Shown in pieces: positions 9,838 through 49,681 of a stretch of DNA of 64,000 nt. Both the position numbers and the translations under genes were made by a program. Every line of letters begins with the position of its first letter. The first letter of the stretch is position 1. Location of the stretch: positions 310,001 to 374,000 of the forward strand of contig NW_020845487.1 of assembly GCF_003704095.1 (NCBI RefSeq), given 5' to 3'. Origin of the DNA: Pocillopora damicornis. Taxonomy: Eukaryota. Under the pieces are notes generated by a model that made no database searches, was not told where the DNA came from, and saw only the letters and a list, made by a program, of their open reading frames with translations.

Positions 9838-12800
9838 TCAAATGCTAGTTTCCATATAGCTGTCAGATTCTGAATACGAAGATTCTCTATCGTTATCTTC
9901 TCCGTGACTACCTCTCCGTTCAGCGGTTCTTCGCTTTGTTTTAAGTTCTCCCTGCAAGAAACAGGGAAAGAGTGTTTTTAATTGTCATCTTAGCTACCAT
10001 TATTTTCATCAGTTAAAGGCGGTAATCTGCAAGAAATTTTACTAAGCGTCTTAACAAGCTTACACATATAATCTGCGATTAAAGGCTTAGATGAAAGACA
10101 GATAGCCATGTGGACCTGCAAGCTTTTAAAATGGTGGATGTTGCGGCTAAAAGAGCTTTTTTAACTTAAGCAATAATGTTATAAAATGTTGCTTCTGCAG
10201 CTGTGATGTTTTGAATTTTAAACATTGCCGTGCTGTGATTTGCAATGCATTTGATGGGAAATTGCGAGCTCTTAAATATGAACACGACGTTACCTTCGGA
10301 ATTTTTTCCTGAACAACAGTGCGAACTCTTTTTGACACACTGGAATGGGCGCGAAGAATTTTCTCATTGTCTTCGATGCACTCAGCAAAAGTAACTGAGA
10401 AATTAAAATAATCCAGTTACTTAAAATCGAGCCTGTAATTTCTCTGGAAAGTTCAACCTGTCTAATGACGAAAAATAGATTTAATACTCGGATAAAGAGG
10501 AAGCTCTCTGTTCCGTTTACTTTGCTTCTTGATCCTGTGTTTCTCTACTTTCTGTTCTTTTTTTTCATTGGCTCAGTTTTGTTTTGTCTACTTGCTATTT
10601 TGCCCTTTTGGCAGGTTTACAAGCTCTTCGAAACGATAAGCCTCGAGAAATACTCGGAGATAATTTTTTACAACATTAAAAGGCGGGCACTTATTTAAAG
10701 GTTATGGAGGGGTACGATTACTTAAGACGTCCGGTTGCGATGTTGCCGAGAAAAAACCAGTCTGAGCTATTAAAGTCACTCTGTCCTTCATCAAAATCTC
10801 ATAACGCAAACAACAAACAAAACCGACGGCGTCGAACAAAGAGGAAACTATGTGCTTCAAAAACGTTAAAAACGTTAGCCTCACCATTATCTGAACCGAG
10901 TTGGTTCCTATTGAGGACCACATCTACTTGGCGTAGTTTACGAAGCGTGTGAAAGACCCTGCTATGGTCCTTATTCCATGGGTATCTAAGAACCACCCAC
11001 TTCGTTGGGTCCTCCCAACTGACACATCGATCAAAGATCTGTTAATCAAGGCAAAACATTTAAGTATCATCTCGTATTTAAGGTTGTGGTTACTCATGTT
11101 ACTGAGTACACTAGTAATGAGGTTTAATCGCTTGTCTCAGGATAGCCACTCCTTCAGGCGATGGGGTGGACTCTGCTTTGAGTGGATGTTTTTCAGTTGT
11201 TTTGATTGATGCATTTCGAAAGTTTCTCAGCGATCCGCTGTTATACGGCTTTCCTGATCATGGGCATCCATGTTTGTAGAATTTCTTTATAATAAAATTT
11301 CTAACTCCTGTCATCATTTATTGGGAACTTAATGTAATTATAATCTCCAACCCACACAAACGTCCCAGGAGAGATGGGAGCGTGCTACGCAACGAACCTC
11401 AAAGATGGCTGCTGAGTGACTAGAAATAACGACAAAAGTCGTACAGGAAAAAAACACCTTGAAATACCTTCCTTCCACTCCGAAGAGTCTGATGTAGATA
11501 TGGGATCACATTATAGTTCCACACATTCACGAACCAACCCTCTGCAACTTTAAAGTCCATTGGACACGAGTAAAACAACGAAGGACCTGGAAAAAGAGAT
11601 GTCTTTAGGAAATTTATTCGGAACGAAAGACGAACTCAAACCTGAGATTACCTCCACACATACTCACGAAATATGCTGATTTACATAAGAAGAAATTCTT
11701 ACAAAGTCAGGAGTAAATACCTAATGTAGCGTCGGAATCACAAAAGTCTTCCAGAATTTCATTCAGATGGTACCACACTTTGGACAGCCAATCAAATAAC
11801 TCTAACAGATCGTCACCTTCAACACTGACCAAAAAAAGAAAATAACGGATCAGTGCAAATTGTCAAGTGACTGTAGAGTTCGGCCAGAAAATAAGTGTAG
11901 GGGCACTTACTTGGTTTCCAACTCACTCCAACTGAGTTTACGCCTCAAGAATCTGCTGAGAACACCGCTGTACTGTCTGTCGTTTACCGACACTCGTAGC
12001 CACCTGACATGTAGCAGTAGACACTTACAGGTCAGTTTACTAGAAAGAACGAAAACTGGACAGGGAAACAGTTGAGAACGACAGCCACTGACTGATAGAA
12101 AAACACTAGCAGACTGATAGACACTGACAGATAAAAAAAACACTAGCAGACTGATAGACACTGACAGATAGACAAACACTAGCAGAATGTCAAAAAAATT
12201 GCCAGTCTTCCTCAATGGCAGCCAACTAACCAAATGGTTTCGTCAATCATACTCAGCTACACCCACCTAAAGTAATGACACAGACTCAGCTCTTTTGAAG
12301 AGAAAGGTCCTTTTCTGCTTTTGTCTCGAACACCAATTATGTAAGGACTGCAACGAACATGACATAATCATGATAACAAAATTATAAAGTGCAAATCACC
12401 ACAACAAAACACGTCTCAACGATAGAAAGATCGATAGAAATTGGCGTCAAACAAATTGTCGGCGCAAGTCTTTTTTTTTCGCTCATTTTGTTTGTTCTTT
12501 TTTTTTAGTTCGCTCTTCGGACTCGGCGCGGGAAAAGGATTGATCATGGCAAACCATGACCAAGGGGCTTTTGGCAGTACATGTCCCATAATACTACTTA
12601 CCAATTGCTGTTTTTCTCGAGCTGTGAGAAGTCAAAAGTATCAGCCAGGGAAGCTAAGCAATTTAACTGATCCAGTATTATGACAGCTGGCTTGTCCACA
12701 TTAGAACTGTTAAAAAGATAACAATTAAAGTTTTTCGTCAAGACGAGGGTCGAAAAAGGAAATCTCTGCAATATCTCGCAAAAATTCCAAGTAAATGAAG

Positions 12801-44200: not shown

Positions 44201-44664
44201 ATTTCCATTAAAACAATTAAAGATGCTAGTATTGTTGACTTGCTAGCAAGATGAAGACAATCAAAAAAGTAATTTATGTATCGGTATCTCTTCGTTCTGA
44301 AGCTTAAGTAGTCCATAAAATTAAAATAATAAACACGCACGATCTCCGAAAATCTTTCACTCGTAATATCTCCTGTTATAACTCAATAAGCTAATGATCT
44401 TAATTGTTTCCTTTCTGGCCTTTCAATTAAGAATTTAAAAGTTAAAACAAGATATCTGTGAAAATCAAGACCAGTACTCACTCTTCCAGAAGAAATGTCG
44501 CAGACATTAAGCGCTCCTGCATCAATCAGATCTTGTAGATTACCACACCAGTGAGTCCATTCAGCTGTTCTACTATCAAGATAAACCAAGGCATTGTTGA
44601 CAACAGTCAAAAGTTTTTGCCAGACTGATGTTATTCCACGTTCAAGTGCGCTTTTGGCCGCCAT
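35217..44664 (-). CDS. SCFD2: Sec1 family domain-containing protein 2 (SM-family trafficking protein), about 16 exons
   Basis: Exon 1 (44482-44664), MAAKSALERGITSVWQKLLTVVNNALVYLDSRTAEWTHW, matches the SCFD2 N-terminus. Other exons: 43524-43751 (KAVFVIGTLL); 41789-41920 (GYLSKVIATELANLPAARTRRK); 40444-40620 (SLILVDRTLDLVGA..DTLADRIIQSLPRLPQHTSDVAVDM); about 35620-35750 (HPLLVLFIVGGITCSEV); last exon 35217-35307 (LLIGSTRL..DNLFPALH*). Some internal boundaries are approximate. Confidence 0.9.
36130..36430 (-). repeat. Degenerate SINE-like repeat in an SCFD2 intron
   Basis: Contains GAGAGAGGCATTGT..GTGTCTTGTCCAA..ACA..GGACTCAAGCC, a motif set related to 56040-56210. Confidence 0.45.
40805..41593. 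mobile_element. Non-autonomous Tc1/mariner (Tigger/pogo-like) element, about 790 bp
   Basis: Imperfect TIRs TA|CAGGGGAACCTTGAGTTAAG ... CACTAAATCAAGGTTCTACTA|TA with TA flanks. Confidence 0.5.
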
Positions 44665-44759: not shown

Positions 44760-45080
44760 TGATGGACACTAAAACTTCCCGCTTCAATATACTGGCTTCG
44801 AGACTATTCAAAGAAGATGCTGGAAAAATTTTGATCGTGGGTGGCGATTTTAATTGTTCGCTGACCAAAATTAACGAGAGATTTATAGCTTCTGGCGTAA
44901 ATGCAACCCAATTTTTTAAGGACTTTACTTGATATAGAGAGTCTAGACCCGATGGAATGAGTCTTCAAAAATACAAAGTCGCCTTGACTCTCACCGGTAG
45001 ATGGACCTTTTGATTTGCTCACGAAGAAGACCAATCTGCTTCGAAAACTCCTAGAGTTGCTGTATTTTTCTAAATAATAC
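44760..45080. mobile_element. Degraded LINE (L1/Tx1-like) endonuclease fragments upstream of SCFD2
   Basis: The plus strand gives KILIVGGDFNCSLT (APE motif GDFN). The minus strand gives RSRLVFFVSKS (SRLD.F-like). Confidence 0.45.
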
Positions 45081-45959
45081 CGTGAACTTTAATTAAATTC
45101 TTTCAAATCAGAAATTATTTGGTTAGGATGAAATGTTCAAAAAAGAAGACACGCCGTTTCATTTTCAGTTTTCGTTAAAAAGCTGTCGAATTTTCGGTCA
45201 CAAAGGGATATTTCTATGCATGGTGGAGTAATTAAAGCAAAGGATTTAGTGATGGTTTCAAATGAGGCCTAAAGCTATCGTTTGAAAATAAGTTTCTTAG
45301 CTTTCGCTGATCCGCAGCATCATCGCCGTAGAAACTTATTTCTGAGACTGTTATAGAATTGTAACTATGAAGGTTTGTCTTGGCTTCTAGTTCTCGCATA
45401 ATCCCTCACGCTAACCCTAACCCGATTAGCCCCTTGTCCTAGACCGCGAAAACAAATGGCTCGCTGATTTTACTTGGAAGGGAAAGTAACCGAAAGTAAA
45501 GTGAAAAATGTTGGTTGAGCTTTAAAAAGGAGGCTCGGAGTGTCAGAATACGAAATAATTTTGAATTTTTCACTATGTTCTTGGGCAAAGAGAATGGAAG
45601 GAATTGATTAAAACGATTAGATTACATTTACTCAGGTTTATTTCACTAGAGAAAGGAAGGTGAGAGGGTTTATTTGATTCTGTTAAGGTTTTAGACTTGG
45701 TCATGCCAGCTTGCCTGAAGGCCCTAACCTCAACCAGATCCTTAATCAATTACGCCTTAGATATGACCAACTTTTTCGATGTTTCCCAAGCTCCTCGAAA
45801 TTAAATCACCTCGTATGTGGATGAGGCAATGTTAACAAAGAAAAGCCCTTTATACCTACGATATTTCCGTACTTTTAATTTTATTTTATAGAGGGCCACT
45901 GTGTCATCAGTTTTATTACTTTAGTGTGCTACTCTCTATAAATTAAGTTTTCTCTAATT

Positions 45960-46144
45960 TACTGTATCAGTATAAATTTGTGGAGTGTCAGATGATTAAT
46001 TTTGGCTTTGCCTCGATTAACTCGGAAAGGTCGGCGATCCAAGCTCTGAACATTGTTTTCTGTTAATATTCTTGGTATGCTCTCAATCATTGGCTATGGG
46101 TGCGTTGGTTGCGGAGAGATGTCCTAATAAGAATGACATCATAT
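45960..46144 (-). pseudogene. Decayed continuation of the connexin-like ORF resembling a pre-NACHT linker
   Basis: Same frame after the stop: I*CHSY*DISPQPTHP*PMIESIPRILTENNVQSLDRRPFRVNRGKAKINHLTL, then QIYTD after a frameshift (LxLxxIYT-type motif). Confidence 0.5.
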
Positions 46145-46918
46145 TCATTTCCGTCCCTTTTGCTGTGAGCGGCCTTGGGGCGAGTCGGGAATATTTAGGT
46201 GGTCAGTAAGAAACGTTTTTCTTCGCAAAAAAATGCAGAGCATTTCAATCAAAATAAGAAGCACGTAAGTTCCATTCGTTACGAGAAGAGCACGCAACCA
46301 GAAGGTCTTCTTCTTTGCCCGTGGATTGTGACACTCGAGCTCGAGTGGGATAATTCTGCGCTGATCATCTTCTCCTGTTGTTGAGCAATGAAATTTGGGG
46401 AGAATTTCGAAACGATAGAGCAACAGAGTTTGTAAGATAATAAACAATACCCCTGTGACAAGCCTTATGGAAAGTTGATAACAGTAAGCAAGAAAAAGCT
46501 TGCGTCCCATTCTTTCTTTTTCGTCGTTACGTGACTGTCTCCCTTCATCGTCGTGTGACTGTTTGCTGTTCTGTAATTGATCGACTATAGGACTCGCTAT
46601 CTGGGCGTAAACTGCACAAACAAACCCCACAAGGAAGCAATGTACAATCACGAAGCCATAGATAGGGACACTATATTCGTTATACCGCCTCTCGTACAGC
46701 TCAAAACACTTTCCCCGGTAAAGTTCGCTGTTGTCGATGTCGTCGCTGCGTTCTGGAGCCCCACTGCAGTGAAAGTCAAACCTGGATTCCCTGTGTTCGA
46801 TGTCTACAAAGACACCAGAAAGGGTTACTGCGAGTCCGAACCACAAGATAACTGCTACGTAACTTAGCAGGTTTAAGGTTTTCGGTCCTAGTATTTTTTT
46901 AAGAGCTTCAGCATCCAT
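46145..46918 (-). CDS. Intronless four-transmembrane connexin-like protein, 257 aa, resembling the N-terminal TM domain of anthozoan membrane-anchored NLRs
   Basis: Four hydrophobic helices. EL1 is ESRFDFHC...GKCFELY (connexin EQSxFxC...CYD). TM3 is RKLFLAYCYQLSIRLVTGVLFIILQTLLLY (connexin LLxTY..K..F..Q..LY). EL2 is KFHC...LECHNPRAKKKTFW (connexin YxC...VDCFxSRPTEKTxF). TM4 ends LLILIEM (connexin LNxxE). Strong start context GCGATGG. Confidence 0.8.
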   Translation of the reverse strand: MDAEALKKILGPKTLNLLSYVAVILWFGLAVTLSGVFVDIEHRESRFDFHCSGAPERSDDIDNSELYRGKCFELYERRYNEYSVPIYGFVIVHCFLVGFVCAVYAQIASPIVDQLQNSKQSHDDEGRQSRNDEKERMGRKLFLAYCYQLSIRLVTGVLFIILQTLLLYRFEILPKFHCSTTGEDDQRRIIPLELECHNPRAKKKTFWLRALLVTNGTYVLLILIEMLCIFLRRKTFLTDHLNIPDSPQGRSQQKGRK

Positions 46919-47011
46919 CGCTCCCGTTTGTTCGAGTAAGATTCTTCTTCACTCATTTGTCATCTGACGATGGTCAATAAAACGTGTGGTTTTCATATCA
47001 CCTCTGATGCA

Positions 47012-47115
47012 GGGTTTATTTAAAGACATGCTTGAATATTATTGGTCGGTAGGAAAGAGAGTTGATTCACACAGGAACCCAATGTCAGAAACCGAAACTG
47101 GAAACTGAAATGAAA
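47012..47115 (-). promoter_or_regulatory. Promoter of the connexin-like gene: TATA-like box, CCAAT and tandem ISRE/IRF sites
   Basis: On the minus strand: TTTAAATAAA (about 47014-47023), CCAAT (47041-47045) and TTTCATTTCAGTTTCCAGTTTCGGTTTC (47088-47115), which contains the canonical AGTTTCNNTTTC. Confidence 0.6.
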
Positions 47116-48418
47116 AAATAAAATAAGACACTAAAATAGATACCTGTATCTGCTGCTTGGGCAGAATTTTCGTCACTTGTTTACCTATGTTATGGTGAGT
47201 CGCTGGAGAAGACGCTTTAAATTGTTATTGAATACTGAACAAGTATTATCATATCTCGCAGTTAGTACTTGAGCAACCACCCCTGGTCATAATTCTTACA
47301 TGGGCAGTAAAAGCCATCACAAAACTTCCGAAAATGAGATGAATACTCATAAAAAGGGAAAACTGTCTGAGAATATCTAATGACAGTTCTGAAGGACTGT
47401 AGAATTCCAGCAACCGGGTTCCCCTGATTTCAGTACTTTGGAGGAAAAACCGCTTATCGACCTTTCGTTCGATAAGAGACGAAAAGTCAGTGGTATATTG
47501 TCTGTAATAGAGTACTGGCATTGTGAAGAAGCAATCTCGACAATTTACGTTTTGGATAGGATAGATCTTCGTTCACGGAAAGTCGATGTCAGTGCAACTA
47601 GCGCAGCGGGATTGAAATCTGATTGATGTTTTCATTCAAACTGGTCTTATATTTCCTTTCTAAATTTCTCGATTCTGATTAGCTGAGAGAAATGCAGATT
47701 TCAGGAAATATACTGAACTAAGAAGGAAATTTAGTGCAGGAAAAAGCCTTAGGTAATTTAATGCAAAAATAGTAAAAAAAAAAAAAAAAGAACAACATCA
47801 ACAGGGCAATCTGATTGGTTGATAAACAAAGGCACTCACAAAGAACCAATCAAACATGAGCTCTGGATGACGCAAAGTTGCAAAGCGAGATACTTTCATG
47901 ATAGATAGTATCTTCGCCAAGTTTGAGCTAAATTAGTGATTTGAACATTACCACCCCCTGCCTGGTTTTCTCGTGGATACGCTCTTGATACATTAGCATA
48001 AGACTTCAAAACCATTATGTAATGATAGTGCTACTGAAGGACATCATACAACGATGCTAGAGGAAGTCGCTGTCGCAAACGATTTCGCCTAAAGTTTGCC
48101 GGGATGTGTTTTCTGGCTTAAATAGCACAATTGACAAGGCCACTTCACTAGAGATAACGAATTATCGTTGATAAACCCCAACGGCCAAGAGAGTCGGAAC
48201 AGAATTTGAAAACCTTTTTTTTTTTTTTAAGAGAACACATATATATGATTGTTTAATTCATACTCGTAGTGAAGGTATAGAACACGTCGTTTGAAGAACA
48301 AGTTTGCTACCACATTGAAGTCACATCTAAGTTTTATTGTGTCTGATTCTACAATTAAAATGGTAGAGTTATTGTAAATATACAATTTATATATATTTAT
48401 TTGTCTTATCTGCAGTCC

Positions 48419-49681
48419 TCAAACAATAAACTGAATATAAGCTGCTGAATGAGATTCTGTGTCACATTTCGTGGCATGTTTTTCCATTTTTCGCGATCTC
48501 TTCACCCGACGTCCTTTGTTTTCTTTCTCGACAAACATAACGTGAACGGAATCGTCAAATTTGATAGCCTTGTCTTTCTTAGAATAAACAGAGCGAATCT
48601 TGGCAACCGTATTTTCTAACTCGTTTTCAATGTGGAATAGATCTCTGTTTGTGAACCCGTAAATCAACTGCCACTCCTGGTTGATTCTTTTCAGTACCTC
48701 GGGATCAATGAGCGGTCCCTTTGCACGTCTCTCTTTTCTTTTCTCGCGCAGCATTTGTCGCCGTTTCTTCCACAGTTCATGACCGTCACCTTCAGTAGCC
48801 TCCTTAACAGTGCTCGCTGAGCTCGCTGGGAGCCTATTGACTTGTGTGACAGGGCGTTTAGCGGCTGATTGCATTCTTTCTTGCGTGACACGATGGACGT
48901 AAAGAGGGGTAACGGGACCAGGTGAGAAATCCAAACGGGCGCCATTCTTCTCAACTTTGTCATTTCGAAGCCAAACATAACTTTTTGTGTGTACTGCTAC
49001 CAGTGACAATGCCAGAAGACTTCCAAAAACAGTAAATATTGTAGGAAACAGGAAATCTGGAAAAAAAATACCAAAGAACCTATTTATTTATGCATGATCA
49101 CAAGTAAAATTAGGAGCAAATATATCTTCGTTGTGAAAAAAATTTAGTAAAGATAAACTTGATGAAAACCGAAACTATAGAGCAACAGCCTCGATTGCTT
49201 TTCTTTTTAAATTTGTTTGTTTGTTGTTTTTTTCTTTTTTTCAGCAAAGCCTGTTCTCAGTGTTATACATGCTAGTGTTCTTGGCATAATCGTTCACCAT
49301 TGACAGAAACAAACGCGAAGCGCGTGGGCCATAAATTAATTGGAGTGAAAAAAGCGACGTTCCTCAACTTATAGTGCGGACTGAGAAAACAAGGTAAGTA
49401 AGGTATTTATTATATCTCTGGGTTCAAACAGAGGGGGAACGTTTAAATTCAAACGGGCCCCATAGTTAAATAAAACCCGCTAAATTGACTAATCATTGCG
49501 CACGTATTAAGATATGAAAACGATTTCTATATCTATTTAGGTTTTTCTTACCACTGGCTGTTGTCAGATGCGTCAGATACCTAGCGTGACTGGGTAGGGA
49601 GTGGCTGAACTTAGCACTCCGCTCTCCAGTGGGACTTGCCGTTGCCAACAAAAAACAGATTAAAACGATCGTAACTTTCAT
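48419..49681 (-). CDS. Uncharacterised type-I single-pass membrane protein, 255 aa; coding exons 49552-49681 and 48419-49056; UTR exon ending near 49796
   Basis: Signal peptide MKVTIVLICFLLATA. A phase-1 GTAAG donor at 49551 joins the acceptor TTTTTTCCAG at 49057 in frame. TM segment FLFPTIFTVFGSLLALSLVAV, followed by a basic cytoplasmic tail containing KAIKFDDSVHVMF. Confidence 0.7.

What the first reader, a model, noticed from the sequence alone, without database searches (positions are those of the whole stretch)
46145..46918. Stand-alone connexin-like four-TM channel gene in a non-chordate (coral-like) genome
Seen: an intact, intronless 257-aa ORF with four TM helices and connexin-pattern residues in order: E..FxC...C(F/Y) in loop 1; L..Y.....R......F...Q..LY in TM3; FxC...xEC..PR..KKT.(W/F) in loop 2; L..IE at the end of TM4. 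Each extracellular loop has two Cys rather than the usual three, as in Cx23. Established: canonical connexins are regarded as chordate-specific, invertebrates use innexins, and mammalian connexin channels pass small messengers such as ATP and cGAMP. Inference: this is a free connexin-fold hemichannel or pore. I recall similar TM domains fused N-terminally to NACHT domains in anthozoan NLRs, which would link connexin origins to innate-immune effector pores.
Basis: partly seen in the sequence, partly recalled or inferred. Interest (0 to 1): 0.92.

Follow-up and report, generated by a model that had tools for sequence, protein, structure and literature searches.

The report
Stand-alone coral connexin-like hemichannel gene
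This is a real, expressed, single-exon coral gene for a connexin-like channel protein, but a June 2026 preprint has already described and functionally tested what appears to be this same protein, so the scan rediscovered it.

Summary
The 257-aa ORF at 46145-46918 (-) is there as described. It has four hydrophobic helices and two invariant Cys in each extracellular loop. It passes Pfam's Connexin threshold (41.4 bits against 31.3). A profile of its anthozoan relatives finds only connexins among solved structures (E 2e-8 to 3e-4). Its AlphaFold model (pLDDT 85.5) puts connexins first in both fold searches.

About 20 paralogous places in the same genome mostly lie in long open frames. The window gene has no NACHT. 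PolyA RNA contigs from four studies are collinear with 45631-46979 and unspliced. Variants give dN/dS of about 0.17.

It is already known. bioRxiv 10.64898/2026.06.13.731801 lists A0A3M6TUS9_POCDA (Pocillopora damicornis, 257 aa, PF00029, no NACHT or LRR) as 'pmCxL30'. It has N-terminus MDAEALKKI, the KLFLAY motif at K140, and R232, all of which the window ORF matches. In HeLa cells that protein formed plasma-membrane hemichannels that passed ATP and glutamate. They were gated by voltage and CO2 and formed no gap junctions.

New here: the free gene sits on a long branch among NACHT-bearing paralogues, so it probably lost its NLR part. I found no 'fossil linker' behind the stop codon.

The parts
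46145..46918 (-). Complete coding sequence with stop codon: 257 aa, 29.8 kDa connexin-like (CxL) protein
   Evidence: ORF list. Pfam Connexin 41.4 bits, above the 31.3 cut-off. The exact protein is on record in NCBI and UniRef.
46892..46912 (-). N-terminal helix, residues 3-9 of MDAEALKKI, with four charged residues
   Evidence: AF2 model helix H3-9. The preprint quotes the same nonapeptide for pmCxL30 as the proposed voltage sensor.
46790..46870 (-). TM1 (residues 17-43)
   Evidence: Hydropathy and AF2 helix 17-43.
46664..46789 (-). Extracellular loop 1 (residues 44-85) with invariant C51 and C71
   Evidence: Invariant columns in alignments A1 and A2. Strand 50-52 and helix 61-79 in the model.
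46550..46663 (-). TM2 and its cytoplasmic extension (residues 86-123)
   Evidence: Hydropathy and AF2 helix 86-123.
46526..46549 (-). Cytoplasmic-loop residues 124-131, removed by a common in-frame 24-nt deletion allele (249-aa variants)
   Evidence: RNA contig of run X9 lacks 24 nt here. Seven of 15 listed cluster members lack residues 124-131.
46418..46537 (-). TM3 (residues 128-167) with K140 in the KLFLAY motif (codon 46499-46501)
   Evidence: AF2 helix 128-167. K140 present. The preprint reports that K140R abolishes CO2 gating and gives the KLFLAY motif for A0A3M6TUS9_POCDA.
46325..46417 (-). Extracellular loop 2 (residues 168-198): a beta hairpin with invariant C178 and C196
   Evidence: Strands 175-180 and 192-197. 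Invariant Cys.
46226..46324 (-). TM4 (residues 199-231), with nearly invariant E225
   Evidence: AF2 helix 199-231 and alignment A1. This is the best-aligned part of the Pfam and PDB connexin matches.
46148..46225 (-). Cytoplasmic tail (residues 232-257), beginning with R232 (codon 46223-46225)
   Evidence: R232 present. The preprint reports that R232A abolishes CO2 gating. The tail keeps the family's post-TM4 F..D..HLN motif and then stops.
45631..46144 (-). 3' UTR of about 515 nt, with AATAAA at 45669-45674 and 45637-45642
   Evidence: RNA contigs of runs X1 and X10 end at 45631. The hexamers are read from the sequence.
46919..46979 (-). 5' UTR; the mapped 5' ends of RNA contigs lie at 46947-46979
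   Evidence: Table 8.
47019..47099 (-). Promoter-like stretch: TTTAAA(TAAA) at 47019-47024, CCAAT at 47041-47045, ISRE-like core GAAACCGAAACT at 47088-47099
   Evidence: Motif positions. These are consensus matches only, and function was not tested.

Best explanation
This is the Pocillopora damicornis gene for the free connexin-like protein CxL30 (UniProt A0A3M6TUS9_POCDA, called 'pmCxL30' in Butler et al. 2026). Shown here: it is a single-exon, polyadenylated gene of about 1.3 kb under purifying selection. It encodes a four-TM protein with a short charged N-terminal helix and two disulfide-type Cys pairs in its outer loops. It is homologous in sequence and fold to chordate connexins. Taken from the preprint, not tested here: subunits assemble (hexamer or heptamer predicted) into a plasma-membrane hemichannel that opens on depolarisation. 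It also opens at raised PCO2, through carbamylation of K140 (TM3) bridging to R232 (TM4) of the neighbouring subunit. It releases ATP and glutamate and does not dock into gap junctions. Inferred here: the gene descends from a connexin-NACHT-LRR receptor that lost its NLR part. In the coral it most likely serves paracrine purinergic or danger signalling linked to innate immunity.
For: Connexin homology: Pfam PF00029 E 1.8e-10, above the cut-off. The family profile hits 34 distinct connexin sequences in the PDB, 33 at E 2.2e-8 to 3e-4 and one fragment at 0.028; the next hit is rhodopsin at 0.12. 21 of 26 relatives hit PF00029 on their own. Fold: model pLDDT 85.5, pTM 0.78. All of about 45 listed Foldseek PDB matches are connexins, the best being the Cx31.3 hemichannel at E 9.5e-6. 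The best VIA Z is 16.1, to Cx50. Identity with the published protein: 257 aa, 29.8 kDa, MDAEALKKI, K140 in KLFLAY and R232. The genome size of 234.35 Mb matches the 234 Mb P. damicornis assembly. Expression and gene structure: collinear RNA contigs in four polyA, oligo-dT or random-primed libraries, bounded at 45631 and 46947-46979, with silent flanks. Constraint: 10 synonymous against 6 non-synonymous variants over 170 and 601 sites. The only indel in the CDS is 24 nt, whereas the UTR indels are 1, 2, 3 and 4 nt. All 15 listed variants keep the Cys, K140 and R232. The same stand-alone 257-aa gene with the same neighbour occurs on Tara coral metagenome scaffolds. Derived origin: the ORF is nested among NACHT-bearing clades on a branch of length 0.96. 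It is 43-50% identical to nearby paralogues but 25-28% to distant ones.
Against: I could not compare the window protein with A0A3M6TUS9 letter by letter, so identity rests on length, species, domain annotation and three sequence landmarks. By Z-score alone the fold does not separate connexins (13-16) from LRRC8A (14.9) and pannexins (12.3-13.9). The canonical three-Cys loop signature is absent. Pfam aligns only the TM3-TM4 half. The RNA evidence is from assembled contigs, which cannot give strand or true transcript ends. The tree is a quick search, rooted only at the midpoint, without a chordate outgroup. The role in the coral is unknown.
Confidence: 0.88

Rival explanations
1. It is a decaying remnant of a connexin-NLR: a truncated receptor gene that is still open by chance and has no function of its own.
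For: The gene is nested among NACHT-bearing paralogues on a long branch. Truncated or broken copies exist in this genome (L011 and L016 with stops) and in another coral (P0005 lacks TM4).
Against: dN/dS is about 0.17 and the only coding indel is in frame. The ORF is intact in all 15 listed variants of a 109-member cluster seen on many independent contigs. A discrete transcript is found in four studies. The preprint reports a working channel.
Confidence: 0.03
2. It is only the first exon of a longer gene whose NACHT/LRR or other exons lie further downstream and were missed.
For: The preprint notes a clade of connexin-NLRs with an exon boundary right after the connexin-like domain.
Against: RNA contigs run 515 nt past the stop, end beside AATAAA signals, and show no joints. 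tblastn with four NLR paralogues finds no NACHT or LRR anywhere in the 64-kb window. The nearest paralogues encode domain and NACHT in a single open frame.
Confidence: 0.03
3. It belongs to the general large-pore four-TM channel fold (pannexin, innexin, LRRC8) and resembles connexins by convergence, not descent.
For: VIA Z-scores for LRRC8A (14.9) and pannexin-1 and -2 (12.3-13.9) overlap those of connexins (13.0-16.1). Two Cys per loop is the innexin/pannexin pattern.
Against: Sequence profiles find connexins only. There is no Innexin Pfam hit at E up to 10. No pannexin, innexin or LRRC8 chain appears at E up to 10 in the PDB profile search. The listed Foldseek (3Di+AA) matches are exclusively connexins. 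The genome has a separate innexin locus.
Confidence: 0.04

Closest known systems
pmCxL30 = UniProt A0A3M6TUS9_POCDA (Butler et al., bioRxiv 10.64898/2026.06.13.731801)
   Same: Apparently the same protein. It is from Pocillopora damicornis, 257 aa, with the PF00029 annotation and no NACHT or LRR. It has the N-terminus MDAEALKKI, KLFLAY with K140, and R232.
   Different: Nothing detectable. The preprint's text labels it P. meandrina although the accession is a P. damicornis entry. The full sequence is not printed there, so a letter-by-letter check was not possible.
Anthozoan connexin-NLRs (CxL-NACHT-LRR), including this genome's paralogues such as L021:1780-5256:- and L022:2-3025:-
   Same: The four-TM domain is homologous at 43-50% identity, with the same four invariant Cys and the same post-TM4 motif.
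   Different: The window gene stops 26 residues after TM4 and has no NACHT, HD2 or LRR. It has a shorter E2 loop without the N-x-S/T sites of its paralogues, and it sits on a long branch.
Vertebrate hemichannel-type connexins: Cx31.3/GJC3 (PDB 6L3T, 6L3V) and Cx23/GJE1
   Same: Cx31.3 is the best sequence and Foldseek match. The topology, N-terminal helix and E2 beta hairpin are shared. According to the preprint these connexins are also hemichannel-only, and the epsilon clade (Cx23) also has two Cys per loop.
   Different: Identity is only 14-20%. Pfam aligns only the TM3-TM4 half. The extracellular loops are larger. The proposed CO2 bridge is TM3-TM4, not TM2-TM3.
Pannexin-1/2, LRRC8A and innexin INX-6
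   Same: They share the overall four-TM large-pore fold (Z 10.6-14.9) and two Cys per loop. Pannexin-1 is likewise an ATP-release channel that forms no junctions.
   Different: There is no sequence-profile similarity. The genome has its own separate innexin locus.

Membership tests
Connexin (Pfam PF00029 / InterPro IPR038359 superfamily) | Sequence-profile match above the curated threshold | tested here: met
   41.4 bits against a cut-off of 31.3, E 1.8e-10, although only residues 116-230 align. The family profile matches connexin chains over profile positions 21-257 at E down to 2.2e-8.
Connexin (Pfam PF00029 / InterPro IPR038359 superfamily) | Four TM helices with a short N-terminal helix before TM1 | tested here: met
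   Hydropathy and the AF2 model: H3-9, 17-43, 86-123, 128-167, 199-231.
Connexin (Pfam PF00029 / InterPro IPR038359 superfamily) | Fold superposes on solved connexin subunits | tested here: met
   All of about 45 listed Foldseek matches are connexins, with TM-score 0.51-0.69 normalised by target. VIA Z is 16.1 to Cx50, but LRRC8 and pannexin score close by.
Connexin (Pfam PF00029 / InterPro IPR038359 superfamily) | Three conserved Cys in each extracellular loop (canonical signature, from established knowledge) | tested here: not met
   There are two per loop: C51 and C71, C178 and C196, invariant across 70 relatives. The preprint notes the same pattern in the vertebrate epsilon clade.
Connexin (Pfam PF00029 / InterPro IPR038359 superfamily) | Coding sequence in a single exon | tested here: met
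   RNA contigs are collinear with the genome and show no joints.
Connexin (Pfam PF00029 / InterPro IPR038359 superfamily) | Assembly into a hexameric pore | not testable with these tools
The preprint reports plausible AF3 hexamers and heptamers and channel activity.
Connexin (Pfam PF00029 / InterPro IPR038359 superfamily) | Docking of two hemichannels into a gap junction | not tested
   This needs a bench assay. The preprint saw no plaques and no NBDG dye transfer for pmCxL30.
Innexin / pannexin (PF00876) | Sequence-profile match | tested here: not met
   No Innexin hit at E up to 10, and no innexin, pannexin or LRRC8 chain at E up to 10. The genome's true innexin lies elsewhere, at C4198:17021-17569.
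Connexin-NLR (CxL-NACHT-LRR receptor) | NACHT NTPase domain downstream of the TM domain in the same gene | tested here: not met
   There is a stop codon 26 residues after TM4. No NACHT or LRR similarity appears anywhere in the window or in the flanks. The transcript ends 515 nt after the stop. The tested paralogues do have NACHT.
Claudin / tetraspanin four-TM proteins | Best fold or sequence match | tested here: not met
   No sequence hits. The only claudin-type row is a designed claudin fold at Z 9.0, rank 44.

The most novel reading that the evidence does not exclude
The free CxL30 subunit does not act only as a homomeric channel. It co-assembles with the connexin-NLR paralogues of the same genome, which share its TM domain at 43-50% identity. 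It would then tune or cap their membrane pores: a NACHT-less regulatory or decoy subunit of a membrane-bound NLR signalling complex, perhaps induced through the ISRE-like promoter element. Nothing here tests this reading, and nothing excludes it.
Probability: 0.08. Interest if true: 0.7.

Novelty: already known. Interest (0 to 1): 0.25.

Why it matters
Connexins were long taken to be a chordate invention. A coral connexin homologue, free or fused to NLR immune receptors, moves their origin back to the cnidarian-bilaterian ancestor. It also ties large-pore channels to innate immunity. That case has now been made, with experiments on this very protein, in a June 2026 preprint, so this window adds no new discovery. 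This analysis independently confirms the homology, the gene model, its expression and its constraint. It adds three modest points: the free gene is probably a derived, fast-evolved offshoot of a connexin-NLR; a common 8-residue deletion allele exists in its cytoplasmic loop; and its role in the living coral is still open.

Tried and rejected
1. The word-indexed protein search found only one cluster, at 99% identity. It was too insensitive at 40-50% identity and blind to the long NLR relatives. The exhaustive phmmer search and the own-genome search found the family.

2. Single-sequence phmmer against the PDB was only suggestive (E 0.28). The family profile was needed.

4. I looked for a 'fossil NLR linker' behind the stop codon. 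The tblastn extension past the stop crosses four stop codons with scattered identities. blastn and tblastx of 45000-46147 against ten paralogue loci found nothing. Rejected as undetectable.

5. I looked for NACHT or LRR exons elsewhere in the window and found none.

6. P0005, the nearest non-Pocillopora relative at 51% identity, was checked as a possible free orthologue. It is a truncated copy that lacks TM4 and is closer to the L022 type. Rejected.

7. P0013, a 108-aa fragment at 76% identity, was checked as a sister-genus orthologue. Its differences are almost all of the kind a C-to-T change gives (A>V, P>L, R>W, H>Y, L>F), so it is probably a bisulfite-converted read assembly of the same gene. 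Rejected.

8. Vertebrate contamination was considered. It is rejected by the NACHT-fused paralogues in the same genome, by the coral metagenome scaffolds, and by only 14-20% identity to vertebrate connexins.

Masked N stretches in paralogue loci were left as they are, and rows containing them were dropped from the tree.

Full report
**Observation**

The window holds an ATG-initiated 257-codon ORF at 46145-46918 on the minus strand. Only two other ORFs of 110 aa or more lie in the surrounding 20 kb, and both are shorter. The protein weighs 29.8 kDa and has four hydrophobic segments and eight Cys, four of them in the predicted outer loops: C51, C71, C178 and C196.

**Is it a connexin?**

- Pfam's Connexin model (PF00029) matches at E 1.8e-10 and 41.4 bits, above the curated 31.3 bits. 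Only residues 116-230 (TM3, loop 2, TM4) align. No innexin model appears even at E 10.
- The single sequence finds only connexins among solved structures, but weakly: E 0.28 for Cx31.3/GJC3.
- A profile of 26 connexin-like domains (alignment A2) finds 34 distinct connexin sequences: Cx31.3, Cx46, Cx32, Cx36, Cx26, Cx43, Cx50 and Cx40.1. Thirty-three score E 2.2e-8 to 3e-4, over nearly the whole domain. The next hit is rhodopsin at E 0.12. No pannexin, innexin, LRRC8 or claudin is listed.
- Twenty-one of those 26 relatives match PF00029 on their own.
- An AlphaFold2 model built on a 70-sequence alignment is confident: pLDDT 85.5, pTM 0.78. It shows a short N-terminal helix, four long helices and a beta hairpin in loop 2.
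- All of about 45 listed Foldseek matches in the PDB are connexins, the best being the Cx31.3 hemichannel at E 9.5e-6.
- An aligner that does not depend on Foldseek also ranks a connexin first (Cx50, Z 16.1). But LRRC8A (14.9) and pannexins (12.3-13.9) fall among the other connexins (13.0-14.1), and innexin INX-6 scores 10.6.

So the fold alone indicates only a large-pore four-TM channel. It is the sequence profiles that assign the protein to connexins. The canonical three-Cys loop signature is not met. There are two Cys per loop, and these are the only invariant columns across 70 relatives.

**Relatives**

- The window's genome is 234.35 Mb in 4393 contigs. It has 23 matching places, most at 45-50% identity and inside long open frames.
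- Of the six long frames scanned, five carry a NACHT. Four of those also carry NLRC4-HD2 and LRR, and three also hit the Connexin model at their N-terminus.
- An exhaustive search of 1.84 billion representatives gives 164 relatives at E up to 1e-3. With a NACHT model built from this genome's paralogues, 34 of 35 relatives of 700 aa or more carry a NACHT.
- The genome also has one separate innexin locus.

**Gene model and expression**

- RNA-library contigs from four different studies lie collinear on the ORF with no joints: 45631-46957, 45678-46947, 45837-46979 and 45989-46967. The libraries were polyA, oligo-dT or random-primed.
- The flanks 44816-45585 and 46980-48200 are empty in the polyA libraries.
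- The 3' ends lie beside two AATAAA hexamers, at 45669-45674 and 45637-45642. A TTTAAATAAA and a CCAAT lie 40-100 nt upstream of the mapped 5' ends.
- These are assembled contigs, so strand and exact ends are not shown. The picture is still of a discrete, unspliced mRNA of about 1.3 kb.
- No NACHT or LRR similarity exists anywhere in the 64 kb. The gene really is stand-alone.

**Constraint**

- The variants seen in those contigs are 10 synonymous and 6 non-synonymous, over 170 and 601 sites. That gives dN/dS of about 0.17.
- The only coding indel is an in-frame 24-nt deletion, whereas the UTR indels are 1, 2, 3 and 4 nt.
- The protein's 90% cluster has 109 members of 246-279 aa. Of the 15 listed, several are seen on many contigs.
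- Tara coral metagenome scaffolds carry the same 257-aa gene with the same upstream neighbour.
- Seven of the 15 listed variants lack residues 124-131 in the cytoplasmic loop. The four loop Cys, K140 and R232 never vary.

**Prior knowledge**

[quoted passage not shown] It reports the following.

- Connexin-like domains occur in anthozoans and some protostomes, and 92% of the anthozoan ones are fused to NACHT.
- Each loop has two Cys, as in the vertebrate epsilon clade.
- HHpred gives 99.95% to 6L3U.
- Experiments were done on 'pmCxL30'.

Its supplementary tables identify pmCxL30 as A0A3M6TUS9_POCDA: Pocillopora damicornis, 257 aa, PF00029, no NACHT or LRR, motif KLFLAY with K140, and R232. They count 13 connexin-like genes and 1 innexin in P. 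damicornis. The window ORF has the same length, the same N-terminal MDAEALKKI, K140 within KLFLAY, and R232. The exact protein is on record in NCBI and UniRef.

I conclude that the window encodes that very protein. The full sequence is not printed in the preprint, so I could not check this letter by letter.

The preprint's experiments, which I have not tested, gave these results. In HeLa cells the protein reaches the plasma membrane. It releases ATP and glutamate on depolarisation and at raised PCO2. It loses CO2 sensitivity, but not voltage sensitivity, with K140R or R232A. It forms no gap junctions.

**Origin of the free form**

- In a quick maximum-likelihood tree of 88 connexin-like domains, the window protein and its 99% twin sit on a branch of length 0.96. 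They fall inside a group of this genome's connexin-NLRs, which is itself nested in successive clades of NACHT-bearing proteins.
- The window protein is 43-50% identical to the neighbouring paralogues but 25-28% to the distant ones. A root on its own branch is therefore unlikely.
- The free gene thus most likely arose from a connexin-NLR by loss of the NLR part. It then changed quickly (shorter loop 2, no N-x-S/T sites) and later came under constraint.
- The tree has no chordate outgroup, so this remains an inference.
- I found no trace of the lost part. The alignment past the stop codon is noise, and the flanks share nothing with ten paralogue loci.

**Verdict**

It is already known and has been tested at the bench in a recent preprint. 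The open points are the oligomer prediction, which was not available, the role in the living coral, and whether the free subunit mixes with the connexin-NLR paralogues.

Noticed in passing
window 47088-47115: An ISRE-like core GAAACCGAAACT, followed by GGAAACTGAAATGAAA, lies about 110-140 nt upstream of the mapped 5' ends of the transcript. The 12-mer pattern GAAANNGAAACT occurs 3 times in the window against 0.5 expected, and 1 of 100 shuffles reached 3. It is suggestive of IRF control but weak on its own.
   Followed up: partly
window 46526-46553 (residues 124-131): A common in-frame 24-nt deletion allele removes 8 residues of the cytoplasmic loop, giving 249-aa variants. It is seen in an RNA contig and in 7 of 15 listed cluster members. 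Its effect on gating is unknown.
   Followed up: partly
window 46455 (codon 155): The reference genome has T155 in TM3. All 14 other listed variants, and three of the four RNA runs, have I155. The reference allele is the rare one.
   Followed up: no
protein P0013 (Logan, 108 aa): This '76% identical' fragment differs from the window protein almost only by changes that C-to-T conversion would give (A>V, P>L, R>W, H>Y, L>F). It is probably an assembly of bisulfite-converted reads of the same gene rather than an orthologue.
   Followed up: partly
window 48247-49009 (-): A 196-aa lysine- and arginine-rich ORF (48419-49009) is covered by RNA contigs. A 198- or 218-aa ORF lies in the same place beside the connexin-like gene on Tara scaffolds. 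Its identity was not examined.
   Followed up: no
window 44481-44663: This is an exon of a neighbouring gene. Contigs of 2.6 kb from three runs all break off at 44481 with the same loose sequence, which points to a splice site there.
   Followed up: no
G000 contigs C2282, C897, C14 and C4198: The connexin-NLR paralogues lie in clusters: four places on C2282, at least three on C897, and several within 7 kb on C14. The genome's single innexin locus (C4198:17021-17569) lies about 55 kb from a connexin-NLR on the same contig.
   Followed up: no
L031:8001-9065 and 10046-12538: In another coral's 2.57-Mb contig, a truncated connexin-like ORF lacking TM4 is followed by a run of short head-to-tail ORFs of 54, 60 and 120 aa on the other strand. 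This looks like a tandem repeat.
   Followed up: no
preprint 10.64898/2026.06.13.731801, text and supplementary tables: The protein is called pmCxL30 and ascribed to Pocillopora meandrina, but its accession A0A3M6TUS9_POCDA is a P. damicornis entry. This is a labelling inconsistency in the source.
   Followed up: yes
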